A stretch of 64,000 nucleotides of DNA from Mytilus californianus (lineage: Eukaryota). Both the position numbers and the translations under genes were made by a program. Below, in pieces: positions 39,401-49,577 of the stretch (positions are counted from its first letter, which is position 1; every line of letters begins with the position of its first letter). The stretch is from contig NW_026262581.1 of assembly GCF_021869535.1 (NCBI RefSeq), positions 128,712,001-128,776,000 of the forward strand, read 5' to 3'. The notes below the pieces were generated by a model. The model did no database searches. It was not told the origin of the DNA and worked only from the letters and a program-made list of their open reading frames with translations.

Positions 39401-42400
39401 ATACCTCTGTTATAAGAGAGCAATCATGTTGTCACAGGTGCATTTTGTGTGTGCACATATCTATTTCACTAAATTTGGTTCAATACATATCTTATAAATT
39501 TCAATATAAACATTGAATAGATGTATAGATCTTTTACGTGATTTTTAAAATATAATTATTTTTTTTGTCTTAAGGCATACAAAATCTTTTAATTGCCATC
39601 CTTTTATGATTCTTTGTTTAATTTGTATTTAGTTTATATTGTTTTATCAATTCACTTTATTTTAAGAAGGGTAACTTAAAACAGGATTAAACAGGGGAAG
39701 TAACCCGAAATTTCTATGAAGTGTTTTGCTTGAAGCAAAAGTCGTTAATGATCGTTAATTAGTACTATGTTTGACACCCAAGCTGTCAAGTGAAGCCATT
39801 TAATTTCACATGGTCAATGATTTACAGGTAAAACAACCCTCATAATGAGACAAAAATGTAATTAATGTTGACTTGTCATTCAAGGTTAAAATATCCCAAA
39901 GCGGGAGATTCTATACTCCCGCAAGGGAGGGTACCGGCAAGCGGGAGATTTCCCGAATTTCGCCATTTGAGCGGGAGTCTCCTGCTCAAAACGGGAGGGT
40001 TGGCAGGTATGGTTATTTAGATAAAACCAACATGCTTGTTCATTTGTTACAAATGCTCAATCAATAAGTTGACTTTAAAAGACATTGACATTTTACAGGT
40101 GTTTGTATTCATTTGTTTATTTAGACCAAAATAGTTAAAAAGCCTTTTATTGCATTCAGAGTTATGGATACGATTTTCAAGGAAAGATTTTTTTTCAGAT
40201 CGATACATCAACTTATGATGCAAGCATTACGGTAAAAAGTACATTTTTCAAAGCTTTCATTTACTCTCCAAAAATAGCATGTACTTGCTGGTTCAGTCAG
40301 CAAGAAATCTTTAAAGATTTACAAATCTGCTGCTTTTGCATCTGGTTTTACTTAGAAGTGAAAGCAAAATGTATACCTATGCATACAAGACAGGTCAGGG
40401 TATGGCCTTCTGTAAACTGTTCTTACTTAGAACGTACATGGATTATTAAAAAAAAATTTTTTGTACTGTATTTGTCGCATACTTCTGTAACAAAGGCAGG
40501 TTTACATTCATTAACTTATAAGCTAACTGAAGATTCTTATTAAGACAACGGCAAAAGCAAGATGATGATAAATGAAAAATGATTCACTTTTAGTTCTCAT
40601 TTCCTCAAGAAAGAAAAGACATAATTTCATTTTTGAATAAATTTTAGGACAACTTATGGTATACCCGGTATATACAAATACATCTTTTGATATGATTACT
40701 TTCATTTCCCACCAAAATTTGTAAAATGATATTCCTCTAAACAATGATGCATGATTTAGCCTGCAGGTAGGGTGGTCCATTAAAGTAAAGAAAATGCCCT
40801 TTCTAATGACTTCACTATACTTTACATATTTTTATTTATGCATATTTCTTGACACCAGTTGACAAAACTTAAAAGTCACTTCCAGTTCAATTGACAATGA
40901 AATGTCATCAAATACTATTTATACCGAAATGTTTTGTGAAATATATATTTTTCACTATTTCATAATCCTTTTGGTTTTTTTCCTCTTCTTGTTTGCATGA
41001 TGTTGCCTATTCTGAAGGGTATTTTATCTCCCAAAGGGTCCATCACTGCTGCAAGCTCTGTTATTTGTGTCAGTATACATTCCAAATAACAGACCCACGT
41101 TTATGGAAAAAGACTTACAGATTCATTGAGAATGAATACCCAATATCATAACTGTACATTTGCTTTAATGTGTAATGCATATTTTTTACAGTTTGGTGAT
41201 TCCCAGAAGTTAAGATTAGTGAGGATTCTCCGTAGTACAGTAATGGTTCGAGTCGGAGGAGGATGGGTGGCACTGGATGAATTCCTCGTCAAGAATGATC
41301 CTTGTAGAGGTAGGTCTTACAAAATTTATTATTTTAAGCAAAAGGTTCATGGGGTTTAACATACTAAGTCACATATTAACATTGATGGGTAAGGGTTATA
41401 TTGATAATCAATGCAGAATGTTTTAACATGTTTATCATAAGTATTCAAGATCTTCTAATGATAAAATTCAAGGGTAGTGCTCACTGTATACAACACTTTA
41501 TAACCTCAGTGCAACTGGTAGATTACAACACTTTATAACCTCAATGCAACTGGTAGATTTGGGAAGATGCTTTATATTTGAAATAAACATAATCAGCTTA
41601 ATATTTCTATAAAAACTAGCAGCGATATGCAATACATTTATATTCTCCTGCAAATCTATATCTTCATTTCATGTATGCCATTATTCTTATTTCTGTAAAT
41701 CATGTATGTGATATGGCTATATAAAAAGTGCTGTACATTTTGTTTGGCTGAGTACACATGTATTGCACGACATGTATAGACAGTATATATGACATGTTTA
41801 TATTCTAAACACAGACCTTAGTGAACACTTTGAGTCTTGTCCAGTTTGTAAGTAGATACAACGTTCCCAATGGCCAAGTTTAGTTTGTCACTTCAGTTCT
41901 TTTCATTTTTTATGGTGGAAGTCACAATATATATTGAATTTTTATTTGCATGCTATTATTCCGATAATTGTCCAAGGAGTTCATACTGCACATTGCACAT
42001 AACTAAAATATTGCATGATGTTAATTTTGCACTCAAGTATGTCTTACATGTGATATGAAATAAAACATTCAATTTTTAAATGTATTTTTTTTTGTCTTAA
42101 TAATAAACTATACAGGAAACTCATTTAGGCCATTATAAAAAATGATACCTAGATTCTCATCCAGCTTTTTTTTTAAATTGGTTTGTTGCAAGTTGATATT
42201 TTTTGCCAATTTTGGAAAAAATTCCTACCAAAATAAAAGATAATAGGTAGAAATCAAAACAATATTTTTTTTTTGGCTAATAAAAATTCAGGGCAAGGGG
42301 AGGAGAATCTAGTGAAAAAAATTATTATGCCCTTAAAAAGATTTTTTTTTTAAATATTCATCTTTAGGTAAATAGAAATCCAAGGCATTTGGACGGAATT

Positions 42401-45400
42401 GTACAGTTCATTTGAAAAAATTGTTCTTACTCATATTACATAAGAACAATAAATCTCATGTATGTTATCAAGTCATTATATGATTTCATTCAATAAAGTT
42501 TTCACACCATTATATATCATCATAGTTCTATATTATCCTTGATAGCAGTATGAATCCTTGACATTATATATAAATTTCCTCCGATATTGAGGGCAATCAT
42601 TTATTTTGCTTGTATTCTTCAATGTTGCTTCTTTTTCTTTCCACAAGTGGGACTGCGGAGACGAATCCGTTTCAAAGTTGCAGTAGTAAACCCAGAGGAC
42701 CTCAGTATGTCTGGCATCTTGTTTTATATTAATGTTGTCTTGCCAGAGTTATTTCCCTTTATATGTTGTGAATAATTGTTGGTATTTTTCAATTTGCTTT
42801 TTCGCTGGAATGGTTACTTGCTTCCCATGCTAGTTAATAAATTTTGAATGATTAAAGTTTACTTTATGTTTAAATTTTTATTTTTTGAATGGATATGCTG
42901 TTTTAGTAGTTTAGTAAAAGCTTATTATTTTGAGAAGGAAATTTTTATATTTTAGTGGAAGGAAATTTTAATAAACAAATCTAAATCATTTGCAGCATTA
43001 GCAATTTTTACTAAGTAGAAAAGTGGGTTAAAGTTGCTTAAATGTGTTCAAAGAAACATAGGAATGAGAAAAGCAAATAGTATTTGAATGTTATTATGCA
43101 TGAAATTAGCTCAGAAAGGTTAAACTACTTTGATCGCTGTGATTTTCAAGGTGATGAACCATGTATGACACCTCATTCATAATGGTAACAAAACCAAGGA
43201 TTGATGGAGTTAGACATCATTTATATTCAGTTTCCCTTTCAGCTTTGAATTGATGTTGTTCCAGACTAACATTGTATACTAGAAATCCTGATAACAGTAA
43301 CATTCAGAAAAATGTTGTTTGTATTTTATACACTGATTACTTTCCCATGTTGACTAACTGATATGTTGCCTGACCATGTTGACTAACTCATATGTTTCCT
43401 GACCTTGTTGACTTACTGATATGTTGCCTGACCATGTTGGCTTACTGATATGTTGCCTGACTTACCTTGTTGACTAACTCATATATTTCCTGACCTTGTT
43501 GACTTACTGATATGTTGCCTGACTTACCTTACTGACATATTGCCTGACCTTGTTGACTAACTGATATGTTGGCTGACCATGTTGACTTGCTGATATATTG
43601 CCTGACCATGTTGACTTACTGATATATTGCCTGACCTTGTTGAATTACTGATTGATTGCCTGACCCTGTTGACTTACTGATATGTTGCCTGACAATGTTG
43701 ACATACTGATATGTTCCCTGACCACGTTGACTTACTGATATGTTGCCTGACCATGTTGACTTACTGATTTATTGCCTGACCATATTGACTTAATGATATA
43801 TTGCCTGACCATGATGACTTACTGATATGTAGACTGACCATGTTTGCTTACTGATATGTTGCCTGTCCATGTTGACTTACTGATTGATTGCCTGACCATG
43901 TTGACTTACTGATTTATTGCCTGACCATATTGACTTAATGATATATTGCCTGACCATGTTGACTTACTGATATGTTGCCTGACCATGTTGGCTTACTGAT
44001 ATGTTGCCTGACCATATTGACTTAATGATATATTGCCTGACCATATTGACTTAATGATATATTGCCTGACCATGTTGGCTTACTGATATATTGCCTGTCC
44101 ATGTTGACTTACTGATTGATTGCCTGACCATGTTGACTTACTGATATATTGCCTGATGTATTGCCTTATCATGTTGACTTACTAATATATACTGCACTAT
44201 GTTGACATACTTATGAATTGCCTGGCCATGTTGACCTACTGATATATTGCCTGGCCATGTTGACCTACTGATATATTGCCTGTCCATGTTGACTTAATGA
44301 TATATTGCCTGTCCATGTTGACATACTTATGAATTGCCTGGCCATGTTGACCTACTGATATATTTCTGTACTAAGATACCAGTCATGTTATAGAATGTAC
44401 TATTTTTACAACTCCTGTATTATGATGACTTTCATGTGCAACAAATTATAAGTTTTAAATTTGAGAAGATGTTTAAATTGTTTGCTAGTTAGAATTTTAC
44501 TTTGTTCAAATATGAATCCAAAAATGGAAGTTATCTTAACAGCTGTAAGAAAATTGAAATTTCTGTGATTGTTTTTATTGAATAAAATTTAGCATAGAAA
44601 ATTAAGTTGAAATGTTATTTAATGATTATTATATTTACAGCTAAAGGAAGAACAAATATTGAATTGAGAGAACAATTTATCCTTGCCCAAGGTGTCAGTC
44701 AATCTATGACAGGATTTACAGCTAAAAGTCCAAGTGGCAGTTCTTATTCTGGTAGCTCTACACATTCTGCAGGAACATGGAGCACACGATCACCAAGTTC
44801 TGCTACTGGACCCATTACCAAGGTTAGTATAAATTGGGGCTAGTGATGATGAAATATCTGAATTTTTTTTTTTCATTATTCAAACATTTAGGCTTTCTTG
44901 ATGACTAAAAGTTTTTCATTATGAATAATAAGGTTAAAGGACAGTAAGGTCTGTACCACAGCTTCATTATTGAGAAACAATTTGAACTTAAAAAGTTCTT
45001 CACATTGTTTTGGATCATGAACCACCAAGTACTGCCACAAGATCCATACCAAAGGTGAGTCTAGTTACAAGTCAAAGTGACAGTTTTTAACTCCAATCAC
45101 CAAGTACTGCCACAAGATCCATTACAAAGGTGAGTCTAGTTACAAGTCTTAGTGACAGCTTCTAACTCCAATCACCAAGTCCTGCCACAAGATCCTTTAC
45201 AAAGGTGAGTCTAGTTACAAGTGTTAGTGAAAGTTTCTTACTCCAATCACCAAGTACTGCCACAAGATCCATTACAAAGGTGAGTCTAGTTACAAGTCTT
45301 AGTGACAGTTTCTAACTCCCAATAACCAAGTACTGCCACAAGATCCATTACAAAGGTGAAACTAGTTACAAGTCTAAGTGACAGTTTCTTACTCCAATCA

Positions 45401-48400
45401 CCAAGTACTGCCACAAGATCCATTACAAAGGTGAGTCTAGTTACAAGTCTTAGTGACAGTTTCTTACTCCAATCACCAAGTACTGCCACAAGATCCATTA
45501 CAAAGGCGAGTTTAGTTACAAGTCTTAGTGACAGTTTCTTACTTCAATCACCAAGTACTGCTACAAGATCCATTACAGAGGCGAGTCTAGTTACAAGTCT
45601 TAGTGACAATTTCTTACTCCAATCACCAAGTATTGCCACAAGATCCATTACAGAGGCGAGTCTAGGTACAAATGTTAGTGACAGTTTCTTACTCCAATAC
45701 ATCAACATATTCACTGAGATGAGGGATTATTTGATCTCCAAGTTTTACACTAGAACCTATTACTGACTACACTAGAACCTATTACTGACTACACTAGAAC
45801 CTATTACTGACAGTAAGGAAAGTTATAAGTCTTAAATTCAAGTTTTTCTAATTGTTTGATGCTTGAATTGTAAAACAATCAAACAGGTGCTTAAAGAATA
45901 TGCTGTAAATGCAAAACAATGTGTACATCTAAATACTAATAAATACAATGTATCAATAAGATATTTGATGAATAATTACTATTAAATTGAACAGATTCAA
46001 ATATTTTTTGGCTTCGTTGGATCTCTAAATCATGAAGAAAATTCTCCAAGCCATACTAATCTGAATTAAGTATCTCTACTACTGGTAAATGGTCTTGTTC
46101 TGTGAAATATTTTTTCATGATTATTTAATTTCTGTTAATGCAATCAGAGGCATAGGAAAAGGAATTCCCTTGCTGTTCCAAGGGTAAGCTAACTATAAAT
46201 ATTTAACATGTCAAGATGATTTCAATGTAGTGTTAGTTTTTTCAATTTTGTGCTTTAAACAAATCAAGATCATTTCAGGCGACCTCATATTTGTTTATAG
46301 TTTTATCATAAAGGTTTTACTTGAAATTTTTTCAGATATTAAAATAAAAAACTTTATGATTCATTGTAATACAATTTTGACAAAGGAAGAAATAAGATTC
46401 TTTACTCATTAAACGTTTAATACTAATGTTTATTTCCAACATTTAAATTAATGCAGCAGAGGACAAGGAGAGCTCTCTCCGTACCGAGTGTAAGTAGTCT
46501 ATTGGTTTGGATGATGTATACGTTATATAAGGAGGATAAACATGCAAACATATGTTGACATGTTATTAAAGTTTTCACACATTACATGTTGCCATCTCTT
46601 CATGCTAGGATACAGTAACCTGTTACACTGGATTAGAAGTGAAGACTTGAGAAGTTGTAGGGACCATGGGAAATTTGTTCATAAGATATCAAGCCTTCAG
46701 AACATTGTCATGTAACATATAAAACAAAAACGAACTCAAGTTGACTTTTAAACGAACTTTATTTATCTGATCTATTTATAACTCTCTACTTTCACTTTTC
46801 TTTATTTCTCTCACCCAGAGCAATTCACATTGTGACGTCAAATTTAATGTACCAAACTTTGTGTTTCAGTACTTGATTTCTGTATGTAAATTGTCCTAAT
46901 CACACCTGTCTTCAGGCGAAACATGTCGACCAGCATTTAAAAAAAAATGCAGTCTAATGAAGTGTTGTTGTCACATTGGCTCTTTATTTGAAAATATTTT
47001 TTAAATTTATTGACAACCCTGCATACCAAAGTATCCACTTAAGGAGTCTATAAGAAAAGTAAACACAACAGCATTGGTTCACCCCATTGAGTTTTTTTTT
47101 TTTACCTAGGAAGAAATAGAATTCTAAACTCATTTAACGTTTAATACTTATGTTCATTTCCAACATTTAAATTAATGCAGCAGAGGACAAGGAGAGCTCT
47201 CTCCGTACCGAGTGTAAGTAGTCTATTGGTTTGGGTGATGTGTACGTTATATAAGGAGGATAAACATGCAAACATCTGTAGACACGATGTTAAAGCTTGC
47301 ACACATGTTGTCATCTCTTTGAAATCATACAGTCAAATTCTGTAAAACTTAATTTGGTAAAACAAGAGTTTGGTCTCCTAAAGAAATGTTTAATGTTTTT
47401 TAATTGTGGTATTGAGCATGGTCTCAGAAAGCAATATGTGTTAAAATATACATACGGTATGGGTTTCTCTCATTGTTGAAGGCTGTAGGTTGCCTATAAT
47501 TGCTTACACCCACTTCATTTGACCTTTGGTGGATAGTTGTCTCATTGGCAATCATACCACATTTCCTTATTTTTAATTAGACTTGTTACATTTAAGAGGC
47601 TTATGTTACATCTTTGCTTTATCTTACTGTGGTCCTGATCTCCTGTTTTTATGCCCCCGCCGTAGCGGAGGGGGCATTAAGTTTTACCCTTGTCTGTCTG
47701 TACGTCCGTCCGTCTGTACATAACTCTGTACGTACGTCTGTACGTCCAAAAGTTGGTTTCCGTTCTCTAACTTTAGTTTGCCTCAACCAAATGTTATGAA
47801 ACTTATACAAAATGCTTATTACCACAAAACACAGATCAAGAATGAATTTTTGTGGCGTCACTTTAACTGTTCTAGAGTTATGCCCCTTTACAAATGGAAA
47901 AATTGCTGAATTTTTCGTTTCCGTTCTCTAACTTTAGTTTGCCTCATCCAAATATTATGAAACTTATACACAATGCTTATTACCACAAAACACAGATCAA
48001 GTTTGAATTTGGTTAGTTTTACCGTTCTTCAGTTAAGTCCCTTTATAACTTTATATGATATGCAAGCAGGGGCATCATCTGTTTCCCATGTTAATAATAC
48101 AATTAAATAGCTGATTATCAGAACTATTAATGATTAACATGATGGCACAGTTCATTCAAAAACATTTTTACATTTTCTTATTCAAATGTTTCTTTGACAG
48201 AAATGAAGTATCTTAAATTTATATCTACAGATAAGAGAGAAAACCCAGTACCCAACACCATGGCGACAACGGATGAAAAACAGCCCTGACGTTGAAGTAC
48301 GACAGATAATGTCTGGTGATAGGATGAGTAAACCTAAAGTCAGCAGAGATATCATGAAAAGCCCAGGTCAGTATAGGCTTACAGGTCTTCAAAAACAAAT

Positions 48401-49577
48401 AAAAAATATTGGATATTCAGATACATGGCTTTGACTTTTAGAAAATTAATGTGGAATATGTATTTTTTGTTATCTTTTTCAAAGTAGAGTATTGTGATTG
48501 GGGATCATGATTTCAAGAAATTTATCTCTTTCTGTATTAGTGTGATATATTTATATAAATTTATCAATTATATCACTGATCCAGACTTCAATGTTTTTTT
48601 TTTTCATCTAATTACAGAAACCAGGTTTTAGGTGATCTTTTTGAAAGGACTTTTTTCTAACAAAAGCAATTTCAACTTATTTAGGAGAGTCAATGAATAG
48701 TTATTTAGCCTGCAATTTCATACAGATGCAAATTGAAGATTTTGTAACAACAAGAAATACAAAAATAAGCCTGAATTAGATTCCCTATCAAAGTATTTTA
48801 ATTGGATGATAGACAGCTCCAAGTTTTATTGTTTACCTGACAGTAATCTATCATTTGAAGTTGTTTCTATGTGTAGATGGTTTACCTGAGTAATCTATCT
48901 TTTGAAGTTGTTTCTATGTTTAAATGGTTAACCTGACAGTAATCTATCTTTTGAAGTTGTTTCTATGTTTAGACGGTTTACCTGACAGTAATCTATCTTT
49001 TGAAGTTGTTTCTATGTTTAGATGGTTTACAGTTATTAACACTAACCAAAATTAAAAAGCTTTTGAGGGAAAAATCAATAAAATTATGTTGTTAACAATA
49101 ATTTTATATCTTGAATTTTCATCCAGTATATGAAATATAGTGTTGGTTTATATTAGAAGGGCTAATTAGAGGATAGATAACTATTATGCAATAGATTAAG
49201 CTTTCTCTAGGAAAAAACTTCTTCATAAAGGGTATTTCTTCTTTCAATTACTCAAAATAAGATATTACGGTTACAGAAACCTCAATAAATTGTGTATGTA
49301 TGTTTTGTTCTTTCCAGCTACCCCTGTAAGTCGCAGCTCGAGTAGAGCTAGTACAAGTAGTCGACCACCAAGTCGTGCAGACAGTGAGGCATCAGAAGCC
49401 AGTGAACCAGAAATCTTTACAACAGTGCAACAAGAGACAAAAAATCTGGGTGGTCGTAACACCACAACTATGACATACCAAACTCATGTGATACAAACAC
49501 GTAGAACTTCAACCCCAACATCAGCCTCCAAAAAAGTATCAAAAATACCAAAACCATCTCCAGCACGGAAAAAATAA
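1..49577 (+). CDS. DST/MACF1: Spectraplakin (dystonin/MACF1/short stop orthologue), 3' portion: 51 coding exons, 5' part lies upstream of the window
   Basis: Exons chain with GT-AG boundaries and matching phases into one frame of 10,047 nt. Spectrin repeats with periodic W/L; conserved [17 protein letters not shown] segment; EF loops [12 protein letters not shown] and [12 protein letters not shown]; GAR signature [39 protein letters not shown]; [10 protein letters not shown]; terminal SKIP. Confidence 0.97.
1360..1483 (+). CDS. Exon w2
   Basis: AG|[11 protein letters not shown]...[10 protein letters not shown]|GTAAGT; phase 0-1. Confidence 0.9.
1545..1885. repeat. Decayed TA-flanked MITE whose right end is tandemly repeated (about 43-bp unit, about 4 copies from 1703)
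   Basis: tacagtgaaacct... left end; repeated gatttagacaggttttactatatct. Confidence 0.5.
2152..2310 (+). CDS. Exon w3, Ser/Pro-rich insert in rod
   Basis: AG|(R)[17 protein letters not shown]...SDNFNLE|GTAAAT; phase 1-1. Confidence 0.8.
2569..2804 (+). CDS. Exon w4
   Basis: (D)[10 protein letters not shown]...KKQLKLQE; AG/GT; phase 1-0. Confidence 0.93.
3429..3558 (+). CDS. Exon w5
   Basis: [10 protein letters not shown]...QQQFAEL; AG/GT; phase 0-1. Confidence 0.93.
3755..4277 (+). mobile_element. HINE/pearl-like non-autonomous element, family B
   Basis: 5' hairpin ccctgcacgacacgttgcagggg; internal repeats; 3' end ggacattggaactctgttcttttatt matches the reverse copy at 61021-62344. Confidence 0.75.
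4282..4814 (+). CDS. Exon w6
   Basis: (D)[10 protein letters not shown]...QRQIHRLQ; AG/GT; phase 1-0. Confidence 0.95.
4985..5147 (+). CDS. Exon w7
   Basis: [10 protein letters not shown]...TEMESIL; AG/GT; phase 0-1. Confidence 0.93.
5437..5603 (+). CDS. Exon w8
   Basis: (A)[10 protein letters not shown]...EQSLQQK; AG/GT; phase 1-0. Confidence 0.93.
5715..6350 (+). mobile_element. 5'-truncated HINE-type element
   Basis: Repeated atctgaccttgacctcattttcatgg and gtcaactatatttggtgtatggaatg units; ends gtgtgcactcttgt. Confidence 0.55.
6351..7335 (+). mobile_element. HINE/pearl-like element with about five 168-bp internal repeats
   Basis: 5' hairpin ataccccacgcaacgagttgcggagggtat; (TGTC/CGTC)n microsatellite; unit starts at 6456, 6625, 6793, 6960, 7127. 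Confidence 0.85.
7562..7891 (+). CDS. Exon w9
   Basis: [10 protein letters not shown]...KKLKDAQ; AG/GT; phase 0-0. Confidence 0.95.
8204..8354 (+). CDS. Exon w10
   Basis: [10 protein letters not shown]...RWENLSQ; AG/GT; phase 0-1. Confidence 0.93.
8816..8985 (+). CDS. Exon w11
   Basis: (A)[10 protein letters not shown]...KHIDKIK; AG/GT; phase 1-0. Confidence 0.93.
9068..9704. mobile_element. Hairpin-ended non-autonomous element, possibly Crypton-type
   Basis: About 142-bp near-perfect palindrome at 9068-9209; inverted 13-mers ttatcacatattt (9210) and aaatatgtgataa (9692); family assignment is inference. Confidence 0.55.
9786..10070 (+). mobile_element. Short HINE/pearl-like element
   Basis: 5' hairpin acccccgctttaaaaaagtggggg; tgtc/cgtc microsatellite; 3' gtgagcagtagcttgcagtttcact. 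Confidence 0.75.
10163..10369 (+). CDS. Exon w12
   Basis: [10 protein letters not shown]...MVLTQYQ; AG/GT; phase 0-0. Confidence 0.92.
10659..10772 (+). CDS. Exon w13
   Basis: [10 protein letters not shown]...GQQRENE; AG/GT; phase 0-0. Confidence 0.9.
12006..12020 (+). CDS. Candidate 15-nt microexon in the rod (between w13 and w14)
   Basis: caTGCcattttacAG|NVCIL|GTAAGT; phase 0-0; GCATG about 70 nt downstream. Confidence 0.35.
12983..13093 (+). CDS. Exon w14
   Basis: [10 protein letters not shown]...DTGVLSP; AG/GT; phase 0-0. Confidence 0.9.
13297..13509 (+). CDS. Exon w15
   Basis: [10 protein letters not shown]...RQQEELK; AG/GT; phase 0-0. Confidence 0.93.
13604..16890 (+). mobile_element. 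HINE/pearl-like element carrying about 18 copies of a 166-bp satellite monomer
   Basis: Subterminal agctcacctg ... caggtgagc inverted motifs; 5' hairpin ggcccaaagggcc; (CGT)n; 3' hairpin aggctcttgagagcct then ctagtt; monomer spacing 166 (13728 to 13894). Confidence 0.92.
17064..17225 (+). CDS. Exon w16
   Basis: [10 protein letters not shown]...WSELNEK; AG/GT; phase 0-0. Confidence 0.93.
17617..17787 (+). CDS. Exon w17
   Basis: [10 protein letters not shown]...AQLQEQK; AG/GT; phase 0-0. Confidence 0.94.
18150..18476 (+). CDS. Exon w18
   Basis: [10 protein letters not shown]...NIITSLK; AG/GT; phase 0-0. Confidence 0.94.
18739..18823 (+). CDS. Exon w19
   Basis: [10 protein letters not shown]...LQKYCS; AG/GT; phase 0-1. 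Confidence 0.88.
19376..19599 (+). CDS. Exon w20
   Basis: (G)QDADTLDKK...EAFEQVQ; AG/GT; phase 1-0. Confidence 0.9.
20115..20321 (+). CDS. Exon w21
   Basis: [10 protein letters not shown]...TKQRSSE; AG/GT; phase 0-0. Confidence 0.93.
20872..20991 (+). CDS. Exon w22
   Basis: [12 protein letters not shown]...KQIAEQK; AG/GT; phase 0-0. Confidence 0.92.
21302..21628 (+). CDS. Exon w23
   Basis: [10 protein letters not shown]...RQQDQVK; AG/GT; phase 0-0. Confidence 0.94.
21845..22051 (+). CDS. Exon w24
   Basis: [10 protein letters not shown]...ALQQSAE; AG/GT; phase 0-0. Confidence 0.93.
22595..22714 (+). CDS. Exon w25
   Basis: [10 protein letters not shown]...EQLAENK; AG/GT; phase 0-0. Confidence 0.92.
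22933..23289 (+). mobile_element. Full-length tRNA-derived SINE (probably Meta-domain type) with 15-bp TSD
   Basis: A box tggtctcgtgg, B box ggttcgaaccc, (CAT)n tail; TSD attatacaatgattt at 22918-22932 and 23290-23304; Meta assignment from recalled ggtcaaaccaaagac motif. Confidence 0.88.
23462..23570 (+). CDS. Exon w26
   Basis: [10 protein letters not shown]...QDEAVK; AG/GT; phase 0-1. Confidence 0.92.
23787..24013 (+). CDS. Exon w27
   Basis: (D)[10 protein letters not shown]...EQQDYME; AG/GT; phase 1-0. Confidence 0.93.
24913..25137 (+). CDS. Exon w28
   Basis: [10 protein letters not shown]...HFQDELM; AG/GT; phase 0-0. Confidence 0.93.
25552..25653 (+). CDS. Exon w29
   Basis: [10 protein letters not shown]...IQWNQVK; AG/GT; phase 0-0. 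Confidence 0.9.
25941..26810 (-). mobile_element. tRNA-derived SINE (V-domain/RUDI-like), split by an insertion at 26041-26666
   Basis: Minus strand reads ggcatcggtggccaag, B box gagttcgaatcc, ttccggcttcctccacc, (CAAT)n tail; imperfect TSD tgtttaataca/tggttaataca. Confidence 0.75.
26041..26666 (+). mobile_element. 3'-end fragment of a Penelope-like retroelement family nested in the SINE
   Basis: Ends gttgtctcattggcactcatacc, as do the fragment at 47468-47573 and the minus-strand remnant ending at 54973. Confidence 0.55.
26889..27059 (+). CDS. Exon w30
   Basis: [10 protein letters not shown]...EGLGDRE; AG/GT; phase 0-0. Confidence 0.93.
27425..27580 (+). CDS. Exon w31
   Basis: [13 protein letters not shown]...IELAKLK; AG/GT; phase 0-0. 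Confidence 0.94.
27984..28178 (+). CDS. Exon w32
   Basis: [10 protein letters not shown]...LKDALRE; AG/GT; phase 0-0. Confidence 0.93.
28498..28626 (+). CDS. Exon w33
   Basis: [10 protein letters not shown]...[15 protein letters not shown]; AG/GT; phase 0-0. Confidence 0.93.
28695..28988. mobile_element. Fold-back MITE, TA target duplication (Tc1/mariner-like)
   Basis: TA|CAGCTCTT...AAGAGCTG|TA; about 135-bp arms, imperfect palindrome along nearly the whole element. Confidence 0.85.
29226..29396 (+). CDS. Exon w34
   Basis: [10 protein letters not shown]...TRAEDRK; AG/GT; phase 0-0. Confidence 0.92.
29674..29829 (+). CDS. Exon w35
   Basis: [10 protein letters not shown]...VQIEDHK; AG/GT; phase 0-0. 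Confidence 0.93.
30126..30332 (+). CDS. Exon w36
   Basis: [10 protein letters not shown]...[17 protein letters not shown]...GYKEAKQ; AG/GT; phase 0-0. Confidence 0.96.
30536..30655 (+). CDS. Exon w37
   Basis: [12 protein letters not shown]...AEIAKHK; AG/GT; phase 0-0. Confidence 0.93.
31099..31265 (+). CDS. Exon w38
   Basis: [10 protein letters not shown]...CSKSVD; AG/GT; phase 0-2. Confidence 0.93.
31538..31697 (+). CDS. Exon w39
   Basis: (R)[14 protein letters not shown]...LMESHK; AG/GT; phase 2-0. Confidence 0.95.
31838..32745. mobile_element. Non-autonomous Tc1/pogo-type DNA transposon
   Basis: TA|CCGTAGAAAGGCTTGTATAGT ... ACTATACAAGCCTTTCTACGG|TA; no transposase ORF. Confidence 0.85.
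33232..33426 (+). CDS. Exon w40
   Basis: [10 protein letters not shown]...LEQAHKL; AAG acceptor, GT donor; phase 0-0. Confidence 0.92.
33857..33985 (+). CDS. Exon w41
   Basis: [10 protein letters not shown]...KHIEDHK; AG/GT; phase 0-0. Confidence 0.93.
34259..34402 (+). CDS. Exon w42
   Basis: [10 protein letters not shown]...[22 protein letters not shown]; AG/GT; phase 0-0. Confidence 0.95.
34890..35078 (+). CDS. Exon w43
   Basis: [10 protein letters not shown]...LIKDHQ; AG/GT; phase 0-0. Confidence 0.93.
35582..35736 (+). CDS. Exon w44, last spectrin repeat insert with SYIP motif
   Basis: [14 protein letters not shown]...PASYIPVLR...PVKLTP; AG/GT; phase 0-2. Confidence 0.9.
36119..36429 (+). 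CDS. Exon w45, end of rod plus EF-hand 1
   Basis: (R)[10 protein letters not shown]...[46 protein letters not shown]; phase 2-1. Confidence 0.96.
36580..36698 (+). CDS. Exon w46, EF-hand 2
   Basis: (K)[39 protein letters not shown]; phase 1-0. Confidence 0.95.
36809..36890. repeat. 21-bp tandem repeat, about 4 copies
   Basis: atgacagcattgtttacacat repeated. Confidence 0.8.
36929..37136. mobile_element. 208-bp MITE with 19-bp TIRs
   Basis: aataaacgtatttacactt ... aagtgtaaatacgtctatt (18/19 match). Confidence 0.7.
37266..37382 (+). CDS. Exon w47, GAR domain N-half
   Basis: [39 protein letters not shown]; CxC zinc ligands; phase 0-0. Confidence 0.96.
37873..37905 (+). CDS. Candidate cassette microexon inside GAR domain (33 nt, or 15 nt from acceptor at 37890)
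   Basis: tttatgtttctAG|[11 protein letters not shown]|GTGAGA; phase 0-0; GCATG shortly downstream. Confidence 0.5.
39138..40011. mobile_element. Non-autonomous TIR element with 8-bp TSD (hAT or P superfamily)
   Basis: TIR catacctgccaacc / ggttggcaggtatg; TSD gttattta at 39130-39137 and 40012-40019. Confidence 0.88.
40160..40231 (+). CDS. Candidate cassette exon inside GAR domain (72 nt, or 33 nt from acceptor at 40198)
   Basis: ccttttattgcattcAG|[13 protein letters not shown](AG|)[11 protein letters not shown]|GTAAAA; both acceptors in frame, no stop, phase 0-0. Confidence 0.45.
41018..41068 (+). CDS. Weak candidate cassette exon inside GAR domain (51 nt)
   Basis: Long pyrimidine tract with TGCATG, then AAG|[17 protein letters not shown]|GTCAGT; phase 0-0. 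Confidence 0.3.
41192..41309 (+). CDS. Exon w48, GAR domain C-half
   Basis: [39 protein letters not shown]; phase 0-1. Confidence 0.98.
41815..41847 (+). CDS. Candidate cassette microexon after GAR (33 nt)
   Basis: tattctaaacacAG|(D)[10 protein letters not shown]+T|GTAAGT; phase 1-1. Confidence 0.55.
42648..42704 (+). CDS. Candidate cassette exon after GAR (57 nt)
   Basis: ttgcttctttttctttccacaAG|(V)[18 protein letters not shown]+A|GTATGT; phase 1-1; GC-richer than the flanks. Confidence 0.7.
43346..44364. repeat. 29-bp minisatellite, about 35 copies
   Basis: Unit gttgacttactgatatgttgcctgaccat. Confidence 0.92.
44641..44822 (+). CDS. Exon w49, post-GAR tail
   Basis: (A)[25 protein letters not shown]...[11 protein letters not shown]|GTTAGT; phase 1-0. 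Confidence 0.95.
45021..45700 (+). repeat. 75-bp minisatellite derived from the 3' end and donor of exon w49, 9 copies
   Basis: Unit contains caatcaccaagtactgccacaagatccattacaaag|gtgagt, versus exon cgatcaccaagttctgctactggacccattaccaag|gttagt. Confidence 0.88.
46148..46183 (+). CDS. Candidate microexon A in C-tail (36 nt)
   Basis: tttctgttaaTGCaatcAG|[12 protein letters not shown]|GTAAGC; phase 0-0. Confidence 0.65.
46457..46489 (+). CDS. Candidate microexon B1 in C-tail (33/30 nt, NAGNAG acceptor)
   Basis: tactaat branch motif, aattaaTGCAG|CAG|[10 protein letters not shown]|GTAAGT; phase 0-0. Confidence 0.7.
47181..47213 (+). CDS. Candidate microexon B2, identical duplicate of B1
   Basis: Same 33-nt sequence and splice sites as 46457-46489, 724 bp downstream. 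Confidence 0.6.
47646..48090 (+). mobile_element. HINE/pearl-like element
   Basis: 5' hairpin atgcccccgccgtagcggagggggcat; tgtc/cgtc microsatellite; two internal repeats; 3' gcaggggcatc. Confidence 0.8.
48231..48366 (+). CDS. Exon w50, C-tail
   Basis: [14 protein letters not shown]...DIMKSP|GTCAGT; phase 0-1; continues the GPITK-IRE motif. Confidence 0.88.
48831..49030. repeat. 49-bp tandem repeat, about 4 copies
   Basis: gtttacctgacagtaatctatcttttgaagttgtttctatgtttagatg. Confidence 0.85.
49318..49577 (+). CDS. Terminal exon w51, Ser/Arg-rich tail with SxIP
   Basis: (A)[22 protein letters not shown]...[13 protein letters not shown]; TAA at 49575-49577. Confidence 0.95.

What the first reader, a model, noticed from the sequence alone, without database searches (positions are those of the whole stretch)
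46148..47213. C-tail microexon trio, with one microexon duplicated and its core kept identical
Three frame-preserving phase 0-0 candidates lie between exons w49 and w50: [12 protein letters not shown] (36 nt) and two copies of (Q)[10 protein letters not shown] (33/30 nt via a CAG|CAG tandem acceptor). All have strong GTAAG donors and a TGC just before the AG. That TGC is the cis-signature of SRRM3/4 (eMIC)-regulated neural microexons in bilaterians. A and B look paralogous (basic run, then S, then VP). B1 and B2 share a 79-bp identical core spanning the acceptor, exon and donor, while the flanks differ at about 7 of 50 and 7 of 61 positions. This pattern suggests selection or gene conversion on both copies. 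B carries an R-x-x-S-x-P 14-3-3-type motif and A carries a K-R-x-S PKA-type motif, so splicing could set the number of basic phospho-switches in the microtubule-binding tail. B2 has lost the CTAAT branch motif of B1 (tactaat to tacttat). I am not aware of this arrangement being described for molluscan spectraplakin.
Basis: partly seen in the sequence, partly recalled or inferred. Interest (0 to 1): 0.8.

Follow-up and report, generated by a model that had tools for sequence, protein, structure and literature searches.

The report
Mussel spectraplakin tail microexons: mostly confirmed
Three tiny optional exons in the tail of a mussel's giant cytoskeleton-linking protein look real: one is old and shared with distant bivalves and two are a newer duplicated pair, but their suggested nerve-specific control and phosphorylation-switch role remain untested.

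Summary
The sequence observation holds. A (46148-46183, [12 protein letters not shown]) and the twins B1 (46457-46489) and B2 (47181-47213, (Q)[10 protein letters not shown]) are the only open, frame-preserving AG...GTAAG blocks in the 3.4-kb intron. On the + strand of all 64 kb, they are the only such blocks with a TGC just before the AG. B1 and B2 lie in a 208-nt duplication with 19 differences and a 79-nt identical core from -25 to +21 around the exon (P about 0.001).

RNA: three runs mainly join 44822 straight to a 136-nt exon at 48231-48366. One RNA assembly of the same organism lacks that joint. Its main contig continues from 44822 into about 37 letters at A, and then B, with no cover of the introns between. 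The junction letters themselves were not shown.

Comparison: A has positional orthologues with the same acceptor context (TTAATGC[A/T]ATCAG) and a conserved R-[KR]-x-S core in host DNA of the file clam Acesta excavata and in another bivalve-like contig. B has none there, so it looks lineage-specific.

UGC and long AG-free zones fit SRRM/eMIC-type microexons. Neural specificity, use of both B copies, NAGNAG use and the phospho-switch are untested. This scan has reported other microexons in this genome, but not this locus. It is a new member of a known kind.

The parts
44641..44822 (+). It is the post-GAR, Ser-rich tail exon, ends ...SATGPITK in phase 0, and has donor AAG|gttagt.
   Evidence: RNA contigs of X10, X7 and X5 lie on 44639/41-44820, and the joint 44820(+2)->48229(+2) is seen. 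It is homologous to the Haliotis, Potamilus and other MACF1 tails.
46112..46147 (+). Conserved acceptor region of microexon A. It holds TTAATGCAATCAG with UGC at -9, and no AG for 79 nt upstream.
   Evidence: It is the only significant intron HSP between the window and L001 (window 46112-46150, E = 7e-4). Local alignment gives z = 7.3. AG-free zone.
46148..46183 (+). Microexon A, 36 nt, [12 protein letters not shown], donor gtaagc. It is the ancient member of the trio.
   Evidence: Sequence. In X7 the bin depth of 3.44 equals about 37 nt at the depth (17.7) of the main contig, which stops matching at 44820 with 68 letters left. Orthologues are L001 630-656 and L002 1500-1529.
46375..46582 (+). 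First copy of the 208-nt duplicated segment, which carries B1.
   Evidence: the repeat finder family D2, 91% identical, spacing 724. 19 mismatches.
46432..46510 (+). 79-nt core identical in both copies, running from -25 to +21 around B1.
   Evidence: P = 0.0013 for such a run. Alignment A1.
46457..46489 (+). Microexon B1, 33 nt [11 protein letters not shown] (30 nt from the alternative AG at 46458-46459), donor gtaagt, CTAAT at -34.
   Evidence: RNA-contig depth is 14.4 in its bin in X7 and 0.58 in X10, with zero depth in the adjacent intron bins.
47099..47306 (+). Second copy of the duplicated segment, which carries B2.
47181..47213 (+). Microexon B2. The exon and 46 flanking bases are identical to B1, and the upstream CTAAT is changed to CTTAT.
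   Evidence: X7 depth is 11 in its bin. B1 and B2 cannot be told apart by exon sequence.
48231..48366 (+).
   Evidence: Joints 44820->48229 (16 raw reads in X24; contigs in X10 and X5) and 48362->49314 (26 raw reads; contigs in X10, X7 and X5). Sequence. Orthologue alignment A3.
49318..49577 (+). Coding part of the last exon. It is Ser/Arg-rich and holds the SKIP (SxIP-type) motif just before the stop codon.
   Evidence: Relatives.

Best explanation
A, B1 and B2 are in-frame cassette microexons. They lie in the intron between the post-GAR tail exon (ends 44822) and the 136-nt exon at 48231 of a mussel spectraplakin (MACF1/dystonin/Shot-type) gene.

A is an old exon. Its acceptor region, its strong donor and a basic R-[KR]-x-S core are kept in other pteriomorph bivalves. 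B arose later, possibly from A, and was then duplicated locally. Both copies keep a perfectly identical 79-nt block covering the 3' splice-site region, the exon and the 5' splice site.

The default mRNA skips all three. In some samples they are included, adding 12 (A) and 10-11 (B) residues to the disordered Ser/Arg-rich tail that lies between the GAR domain and the SxIP motif.

Inferred, not shown: inclusion raises the local positive charge and adds basophilic-kinase sites (KRNS in A; RRALSVP, an R-x-x-S-x-P motif, in B). Splicing would then tune, and phosphorylation could reverse, the tail's grip on microtubules. This parallels GSK3 phosphorylation of the GSR tail in mammalian MACF1.

Also inferred: inclusion is driven by a factor that reads the UGC next to the 3' splice site (SRRM eMIC type).
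For: Gene identity:
- The exon at 41126-41356 matches the GAS2/GAR domain, PF02187, E = 7.5e-21.
- The tail aligns with annotated mollusc MACF1 proteins.

Exon-like anatomy beyond chance:
- A, B1 and B2 are the only candidates in the intron.
- About 0.03 TGC-bearing candidates are expected by chance.
- The 79-nt identical core has P = 0.0013.
- The AG-free zones are 79/62/63 nt, against 24-43 nt for the neighbouring exons.

RNA:
- The skip joint 44822->48231 is seen in X24 (16 reads), X10 and X5.
- X7 has no skip joint. Its 9480-nt contig stops matching at the exon end with 68 letters left.
- X7's depth is 3.44 in the A bin (about 37 nt at that contig's depth of 17.7), 14.4 in the B1 bin and 11 in the B2 bin. 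Depth is zero in the intron bins between them.
- X7's contig for the next exon carries 30 extra letters before 48231.

Conservation:
- L001 630-656 encodes RKLSRPCSL.
- L002 1500-1529 encodes (K)RRFSRHSTL. L002 comes from the Acesta excavata gill metagenome Ga0072491 (PMC8755941).
- Both lie 167-235 nt upstream of the orthologous next exon, with the TTAATGCTATCAG-type acceptor and gtaagtat donor.
- These are the only significant similarities in the whole introns.

Functional context: GSR-tail phosphorylation by GSK3 releases MACF1 from microtubules, and the tail binds EB1 through SxIP (PMC8012552).

Cis code of eMIC exons: PMC8797185.
Against: - The junction letters for 44822->46148, A->B and B->48231 were not displayed. 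Inclusion is inferred from contig geometry and bin depths in one run.
- In the raw-read run X24, cover of the A and B bins (0.5-0.8) is no higher than that of some plainly intronic bins, so it proves nothing.
- No annotated or assembled mussel protein carrying the peptides could be retrieved.
- B has no orthologue in the two outgroup contigs.
- B1 and B2 cannot be told apart in RNA.
- No UCUC-rich tract lies upstream, and B2 lacks the CTAAY branch motif.
- The exons are 30-36 nt, longer than the strict 3-27 nt microexon class.
- The kinase and 14-3-3 motifs are short and common in basic Ser-rich sequence.
Confidence: 0.72

Rival explanations
1. Only one B copy is a working exon, probably together with A. 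The other is a young, still-intact duplicate, and the identical core reflects recent gene conversion or recent duplication rather than selection on both copies.
For: B2 has lost the CTAAT branch motif. The exon sequences are identical, so RNA cannot assign usage. X10's small depth was laid on B1 only. Gene conversion tracts of tens of bases are common between copies 724 nt apart (general knowledge).
Against: The identical tract is centred exactly on the splice sites and the exon (-25 to +21), while both flanks carry 13-18% differences. That is what selection on both copies predicts. In X7 both bins carry depth.
Confidence: 0.3
2. The exons are real, but their inclusion is not neural or SRRM-eMIC dependent. 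It could be muscle-, stage- or stress-specific, controlled by other factors, with the UGC being incidental.
For: Tissue labels were not available. There is no UCUC tract, and strong GTAAG donors and a 30-36 nt size are not specific to eMIC targets. One RNA assembly shows them as the main form, which would be unusual for a whole-animal or non-neural sample if they were strictly neuronal. The mouse Macf1 microexon is reported as RBFOX1-responsive (PMC13067610).
Against: The UGC at -9 is conserved in window A, L001 and L002 across deep bivalve divergence, and lies within the only conserved intron island. The AG-free zones are long. No GCATG lies near A or B in the window.
Confidence: 0.4
3. These are chance pseudo-exons in an AT-rich intron. 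The RNA cover in X7 comes from mis-assembly or another locus, and B1/B2 is a neutral intronic duplication.
For: Inclusion rests on one run's contigs. The other three runs skip. No protein model with the peptides was found.
Against: About 0.03 such candidates are expected by chance, and three are observed, all in frame. A's splice region is the only conserved island in introns of distant bivalves. X7's depth at A equals that of the gene's own contig, and the neighbouring intron bins are empty. The B core occurs only twice in 64 kb and is not a high-copy repeat in RNA.
Confidence: 0.07
4. The B1/B2 duplication is an assembly artefact, with two alleles laid in tandem. In that case there is a single B exon.
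Against: The copies are only 208 nt long and embedded in 516 nt of unique spacer. That spacer is itself covered by low-depth contigs of a second organism (X5, bins 46580-46959). B2 is followed by a repeat-element insertion that is absent after B1. Haplotig duplications are normally kilobases long and collinear.
Confidence: 0.06

Closest known systems
SRRM3/4 (eMIC)-dependent neural microexons of bilaterians (fly and mammal programmes; PMC8797185)
   Same: They are short, frame-preserving cassette exons in a cytoskeletal gene. UGC lies within 10 nt of the 3' splice site, the AG exclusion zones are long (62-79 nt), and B1 has a CTAAT branch motif. The intron just upstream of the exon is conserved (A versus L001).
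   Different: They are 30-36 nt rather than 27 nt or less. No UCUC-rich tract is present. Neural restriction and SRRM dependence were not tested. One copy lacks the branch motif.
Mammalian MACF1/ACF7 C-terminal GSR tail regulated by GSK3 phosphorylation; mouse Macf1 neural microexon (PMC8012552; PMC13067610)
   Same: It is the same protein family and the same region (after the GAR domain, before the SxIP motif). Basic Ser-rich sequence there has charge and phosphorylation that control microtubule binding. Macf1 is already known to carry a regulated microexon.
   Different: Here the basic phospho-motif units are supplied by optional exons, up to three of them. The position of the mouse microexon was not established here, and no sequence homology with it is claimed.
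Annotated 12-residue insert (VCCCNHISHHRQ) at the same GPITK|IREK junction in Gigantopelta aegis MACF1 isoforms (P0025, P0027, P0029)
   Same: It has the same junction and the same size (36 nt) as A, and is an optional element in mollusc gene models.
   Different: Its sequence is unrelated, it is not basic and it has no R-x-x-S motif. Homology of the exon was not tested, because no genomic sequence was available.

Membership tests
Spectraplakin (MACF1/dystonin/Shot) C-terminal module | GAR (GAS2-related) domain followed by a Ser/Arg-rich tail with an SxIP motif | tested here: met
   PF02187 GAS2, E = 7.5e-21, on window 41126-41356. The tail aligns with named mollusc MACF1 proteins. SKIP lies near the C-terminus.
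Alternatively spliced cassette exon | Both the skipping and the inclusion forms are present in RNA | tested here: met
   Skipping is shown by explicit joints in X24, X10 and X5. Inclusion is indirect: in X7 there is contig geometry plus depth confined to the A, B1 and B2 bins, and no skip joint. The junction letters were not shown, so this is met with that caveat.
Alternatively spliced cassette exon | Frame preserved, with AG/GT splice sites | tested here: met
   The exons are 36 and 33/30 nt with no stop codon, and the flanking exons are phase 0 on both sides.
eMIC (SRRM3/4)-dependent microexon | UGC motif close to the 3' splice site | tested here: met
   TGC at -9 (A, L001, L002) and at -5 (B1, B2). 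None occurs within 20 nt of the neighbouring exons' acceptors.
eMIC (SRRM3/4)-dependent microexon | Long AG exclusion zone or distant branch point | tested here: met
   79/62/63 nt for A/B1/B2, against 36/24/43 nt for the three neighbouring exons.
eMIC (SRRM3/4)-dependent microexon | Polypyrimidine tract enriched in UCUC, and a strong CUAAY branch site | tested here: not met
   No TCTC lies between branch region and acceptor. CTAAT is at -34 in B1 only, lost in B2, and at -92 in A.
eMIC (SRRM3/4)-dependent microexon | Length 3-27 nt (strict definition) | tested here: not met
   30-36 nt in the window. The orthologues in L001 and L002 are 27 and 27/30 nt.
eMIC (SRRM3/4)-dependent microexon | Neuron-restricted inclusion that depends on the eMIC domain | not testable with these tools
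   Run and tissue labels are coded, only one read-laying run was allowed, and no perturbation data exist.
Basophilic kinase (PKA-type [RK][RK]xS) site / 14-3-3 mode-1 (RxxSxP) motif | The consensus is present in the peptide | tested here: met
   KRNS in A, RKLS in L001, RRFS in L002, and RRALSVP in B. This is sequence level only.
Basophilic kinase (PKA-type [RK][RK]xS) site / 14-3-3 mode-1 (RxxSxP) motif | Actual phosphorylation or 14-3-3 binding | not testable with these tools
   This needs biochemistry or phosphoproteomics.

The most novel reading that the evidence does not exclude
Splicing sets the copy number (0 to 3) of a basic phospho-motif module in the microtubule-binding tail of a spectraplakin. 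An ancient UGC-dependent (eMIC-type) microexon was duplicated twice in the mussel lineage, and both young copies are held identical by selection. Transcripts can then carry A, A-B or A-B-B, which would give graded microtubule affinity in neurons.
Probability: 0.2. Interest if true: 0.6.

Novelty: new member of a known kind. Interest (0 to 1): 0.42.

Why it matters
Spectraplakins link actin and microtubules, and their C-tail is where microtubule binding is switched by phosphorylation. This locus shows a deeply conserved optional microexon in exactly that tail that carries a kinase-type motif, and a lineage that has multiplied it. That gives a natural handle on how tail charge and phosphorylation are tuned.

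It also adds a lophotrochozoan case, with intron-level conservation of the UGC acceptor context, to the question of how old the UGC-read microexon programme is. The case is testable with a minigene.

It is a modest advance. Regulated microexons in MACF1, and the eMIC cis code, are already known.

Tried and rejected
1. Word search with the last-exon ORF found only genomic ORF calls. The contigs behind them gave two useful loci (L001, L002) and three that stop short of the microexon region.
2. The full library search with the last exon gave no mussel transcript-derived protein. It did give the Haliotis full-length protein P0018.
3. Word search with the tail region of P0018 found gastropod and Potamilus proteins that join GPITK|IREK directly, but no Mytilus protein. 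Whether public mussel gene models already list A and B therefore stays open.
4. Word search with the B2 intronic ORF, meant to fish congener contigs, found nothing.
5. The metagenome scan with the next-exon alignment gave one mytilid-like contig, L006. Its 650 nt upstream of the exon are a transposon, so it is uninformative.
6. An RNA structural element in the identical core is rejected: fold z-scores are -0.14, +0.43 and -0.17, and there is no Rfam match.
7. RBFOX (GCATG) control: there is no site near A or B in the window. Two TGCATG sites lie in L001's downstream intron only.
8. The B core as a dispersed repeat is rejected: it occurs only twice in 64 kb and is not among the highly covered repeats in RNA.
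9. A-B paralogy is only marginal (z = 2.3), so I do not rely on it.
10. I tried to read B-B double inclusion out of the bin depths of X7. The arithmetic allows several solutions, so I make no claim.
Full report
WHAT IS THERE

The window carries the 3' end of a spectraplakin gene on the + strand. The exon at 41126-41356 matches the GAS2/GAR domain (PF02187, E = 7.5e-21). [quoted passage not shown]

RNA reads and contigs define the local exon chain:
- An exon at 44641-44822, ending ...SATGPITK in phase 0.
- A 136-nt exon at 48231-48366 ([14 protein letters not shown]...), phase 0 in and phase 1 out.
- The last exon from 49318, whose coding part ends at 49577 and contains SKIP, an SxIP-type motif.

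The three candidates lie in the 3408-nt intron 44823-48230.

CHECK OF THE OBSERVATION

A (46148-46183, [12 protein letters not shown]), B1 (46457-46489) and B2 (47181-47213, [11 protein letters not shown], or 30 nt from the second AG of cag|cag) read exactly as described. They have gtaagc/gtaagt donors, and TGC at -9 (A) or -5 (B).

A mechanical enumeration looked for every AG + 21-51 nt open block (a multiple of 3) + GT[AG]AG in the intron. It returns only these three.
- With the added requirement of TGC within 12 nt of the AG, they are the only hits on the + strand of the whole 64 kb.
- The - strand has two such hits.
- Shuffles of the intron give 0.03 on average.

B1 and B2 sit in a 208-nt direct duplication (46375-46582 and 47099-47306, spacing 724) with 19 mismatches. 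The longest identical run is 79 nt (46432-46510 = 47156-47234), from 25 nt before the exon to 21 nt after it. Random placement of 19 mismatches gives such a run with P = 0.0013.

B2 has CTTAT where B1 has the CTAAT branch-type motif. The core is not a dispersed repeat: it occurs only twice in the window.

RNA EVIDENCE (the single call allowed)

The skipping form is explicit.
- Joint 44820(+2)->48229(+2), GT..AG: 16 raw reads from 12 start points in the stranded RNA run X24.
- One contig each in X10 (depth 59) and X5 (a second organism).
- The next joint, 48362(+4)->49314(+4), is seen in all four runs.

Inclusion is seen indirectly in X7, an RNA assembly of the same organism from another study.
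- X7 has no skip joint.
- Its 9480-nt contig (depth 17.7) stops matching at 44820 with 68 letters left, and it does not continue into the intron (the bin 44870-45059 is empty).
- The bin holding A has depth 3.44, which is about 37 nt at depth 17.7.
- The bins holding B1 and B2 have depths 14.4 and 11. The intron bins between them (46200-46389, 46580-46959) are empty.
- The contig that carries the 136-nt exon has 30 further letters in front of 48231.
- Sixty-eight letters equal the 2 ambiguous bases, plus 36 (A), plus a 30-letter overlap into B. That is the expected break point of a k = 31 assembly at a branch.

X10 has a trace (0.58) in the B1 bin. In X24 the A and B bins (0.5-0.8) are no better covered than some plainly intronic bins, so that run is uninformative about inclusion.

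The joint table was truncated and the letters were not shown. I therefore rate inclusion as strongly suggested, not proven. It cannot be said whether B1, B2 or both are used, because the exons are identical. Nor can the acceptor choice (33 or 30 nt) be determined. Run labels are coded, so no tissue statement is possible.

COMPARATIVE EVIDENCE

The last exon found genomic ORFs of other bivalves. Two of their contigs reach upstream.

L002 comes from JGI data set Ga0072491, the gill metagenome of the file clam Acesta excavata (PMC8755941), so it is very probably host DNA. It holds the whole tail in 2 kb:
- The orthologue of the 44641-44822 exon.
- One microexon at 1500-1529, (K)RRFSRHSTL.
- The orthologue of the 136-nt exon at 1696-1861.
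- The last exon.

L001 is an ENA metagenome contig from an unidentified bivalve-like animal. It has a microexon at 630-656 (RKLSRPCSL), 235 nt before the orthologous next exon.

All three A-type exons share the acceptor context TTAATGC[A/T]ATCAG (TTTATGCTATCAG in L002), and the two outgroup exons have a gtaagtat donor.

In all-against-all blastn of the introns, the only significant matches are at this microexon:
- Window 46112-46150 versus L001, E = 7e-4.
- L001 616-664 versus L002 1486-1537, E = 7e-5.
Local alignment against shuffles gives z = 7.3 and z = 8.1.

A is therefore an old, constrained exon whose invariant coding feature is R-[KR]-x-S.

B has no counterpart in L001 or L002, and A versus B is only marginally similar (z = 2.3). 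B is therefore a later, lineage-specific addition, possibly derived from A.

Other mollusc proteins:
- Haliotis, Nucella, Littorina and Potamilus proteins, and a transcript-derived fragment (P0010), join GPITK directly to IREK.
- Gigantopelta isoforms carry an unrelated 12-residue insert at that junction.

A mytilid-like contig found by the metagenome scan (L006) breaks in a transposon before the region of interest.

HOW IT PROBABLY WORKS

Shown:
- The blocks are in frame, have splice sites, are skipped in most RNA and are covered in one RNA assembly.
- A is conserved, and the two B copies have a non-random identical core over the splice signals and the exon.

Inferred:
- Inclusion inserts 12 residues with five Arg/Lys plus one His (A), and 10-11 residues with three Arg (B), into a disordered Ser-rich tail between the GAR domain and the SxIP motif.
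- In mammalian MACF1 this region binds the microtubule lattice, and it is released by GSK3 phosphorylation (PMC8012552).
- The simplest mechanism is that the inserts raise the tail's affinity for microtubules, and that phosphorylation of the inserted serine cancels the effect. The sites are KRNS in A, conserved as RKLS and RRFS in the orthologues, and RRALSVP in B, which is also an R-x-x-S-x-P motif.

Regulation:
- The published eMIC cis code is UGC near the 3' splice site, a long AG exclusion zone, a UCUC-rich tract and a strong CUAAY branch site (PMC8797185).
- Here the UGC is present and conserved.
- The AG-free zones are 79/62/63 nt, against 24-43 nt for neighbouring exons.
- There is no UCUC tract, only B1 has a nearby CTAAT, and the exons exceed 27 nt.
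- The resemblance is real, but membership is unproven.

Also checked: no RBFOX sites lie near A or B, and the core has no unusual RNA fold and no Rfam match.

NOVELTY AND LIMITS

- Mouse Macf1 is already reported to have a regulated microexon (PMC13067610).
- Paper searches for microexons with MACF1, and with mollusc and SRRM terms, found nothing on molluscan spectraplakin tails.
I could not retrieve this gene's mussel models, so a rediscovery cannot be excluded.
- I file this as a new member of a known kind, of moderate interest. Its two better-than-ordinary features are the deep conservation of A's UGC acceptor region and the selectively identical duplicate pair.

Noticed in passing
window 45023-45698 (and 45746-45811): A 75-nt minisatellite of 9 copies. 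Its unit is the last 33 nt of the upstream exon ([11 protein letters not shown] versus the exon's [11 protein letters not shown]) plus a gtgagt donor and intron start. It was already noted by the scan (s1-302753). No RNA of organism A covers it. In run X5 (organism B), one contig of depth 243, higher than the gene's own 113-176, lies contiguously on about 140 nt of it. The origin of that contig is unexplained.
   Followed up: partly
L002 614-1200: The Acesta contig also has a minisatellite (29-nt unit, 20 copies) directly after the donor of the orthologous exon. Its unit is unrelated to the mussel's. The same intron position has therefore gained tandem arrays independently in two bivalve lineages.
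   Followed up: partly
window 47340-48100: A repeat-element insertion lies between B2 and the next exon. It has internal 97-nt direct repeats (47753-47849 and 47914-48010). In all four runs it is covered thousands-fold by RNA reads and contigs with many variants, so it is a highly expressed dispersed family. Without it, B2 would lie about 260 nt from the next exon. That is similar to the microexon-to-exon distance in L001 and L002.
   Followed up: no
P0025, P0027, P0029 (Gigantopelta aegis MACF1 isoforms): These carry an annotated 12-residue insert, VCCCNHISHHRQ, exactly at the GPITK|IREK junction. It is unrelated in sequence to A or B.
   Followed up: no
window 48231-48366; L006 652-786: The 136-nt exon of the mussel and of the mytilid-like contig L006 lacks about 10 residues (the ...TEPDG... 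stretch) that are present in Acesta, L001, Potamilus and gastropods.
   Followed up: no
P0018, P0024, P0025, P0026 (gastropod MACF1), just after NDPCR: Some isoforms carry a very basic cassette (VGLWRRNRFRFMRRFL...) directly after the GAR domain, and others go straight to (A)KGRTN. This bears on the scan's note s1-302786 about cassette exons after the GAR domain in this window.
   Followed up: no
L006 1-380: A transposon-like element with about 70-nt terminal inverted repeats lies just upstream of the orthologous exon in the mytilid-like contig JYMV01046817.1.
   Followed up: no
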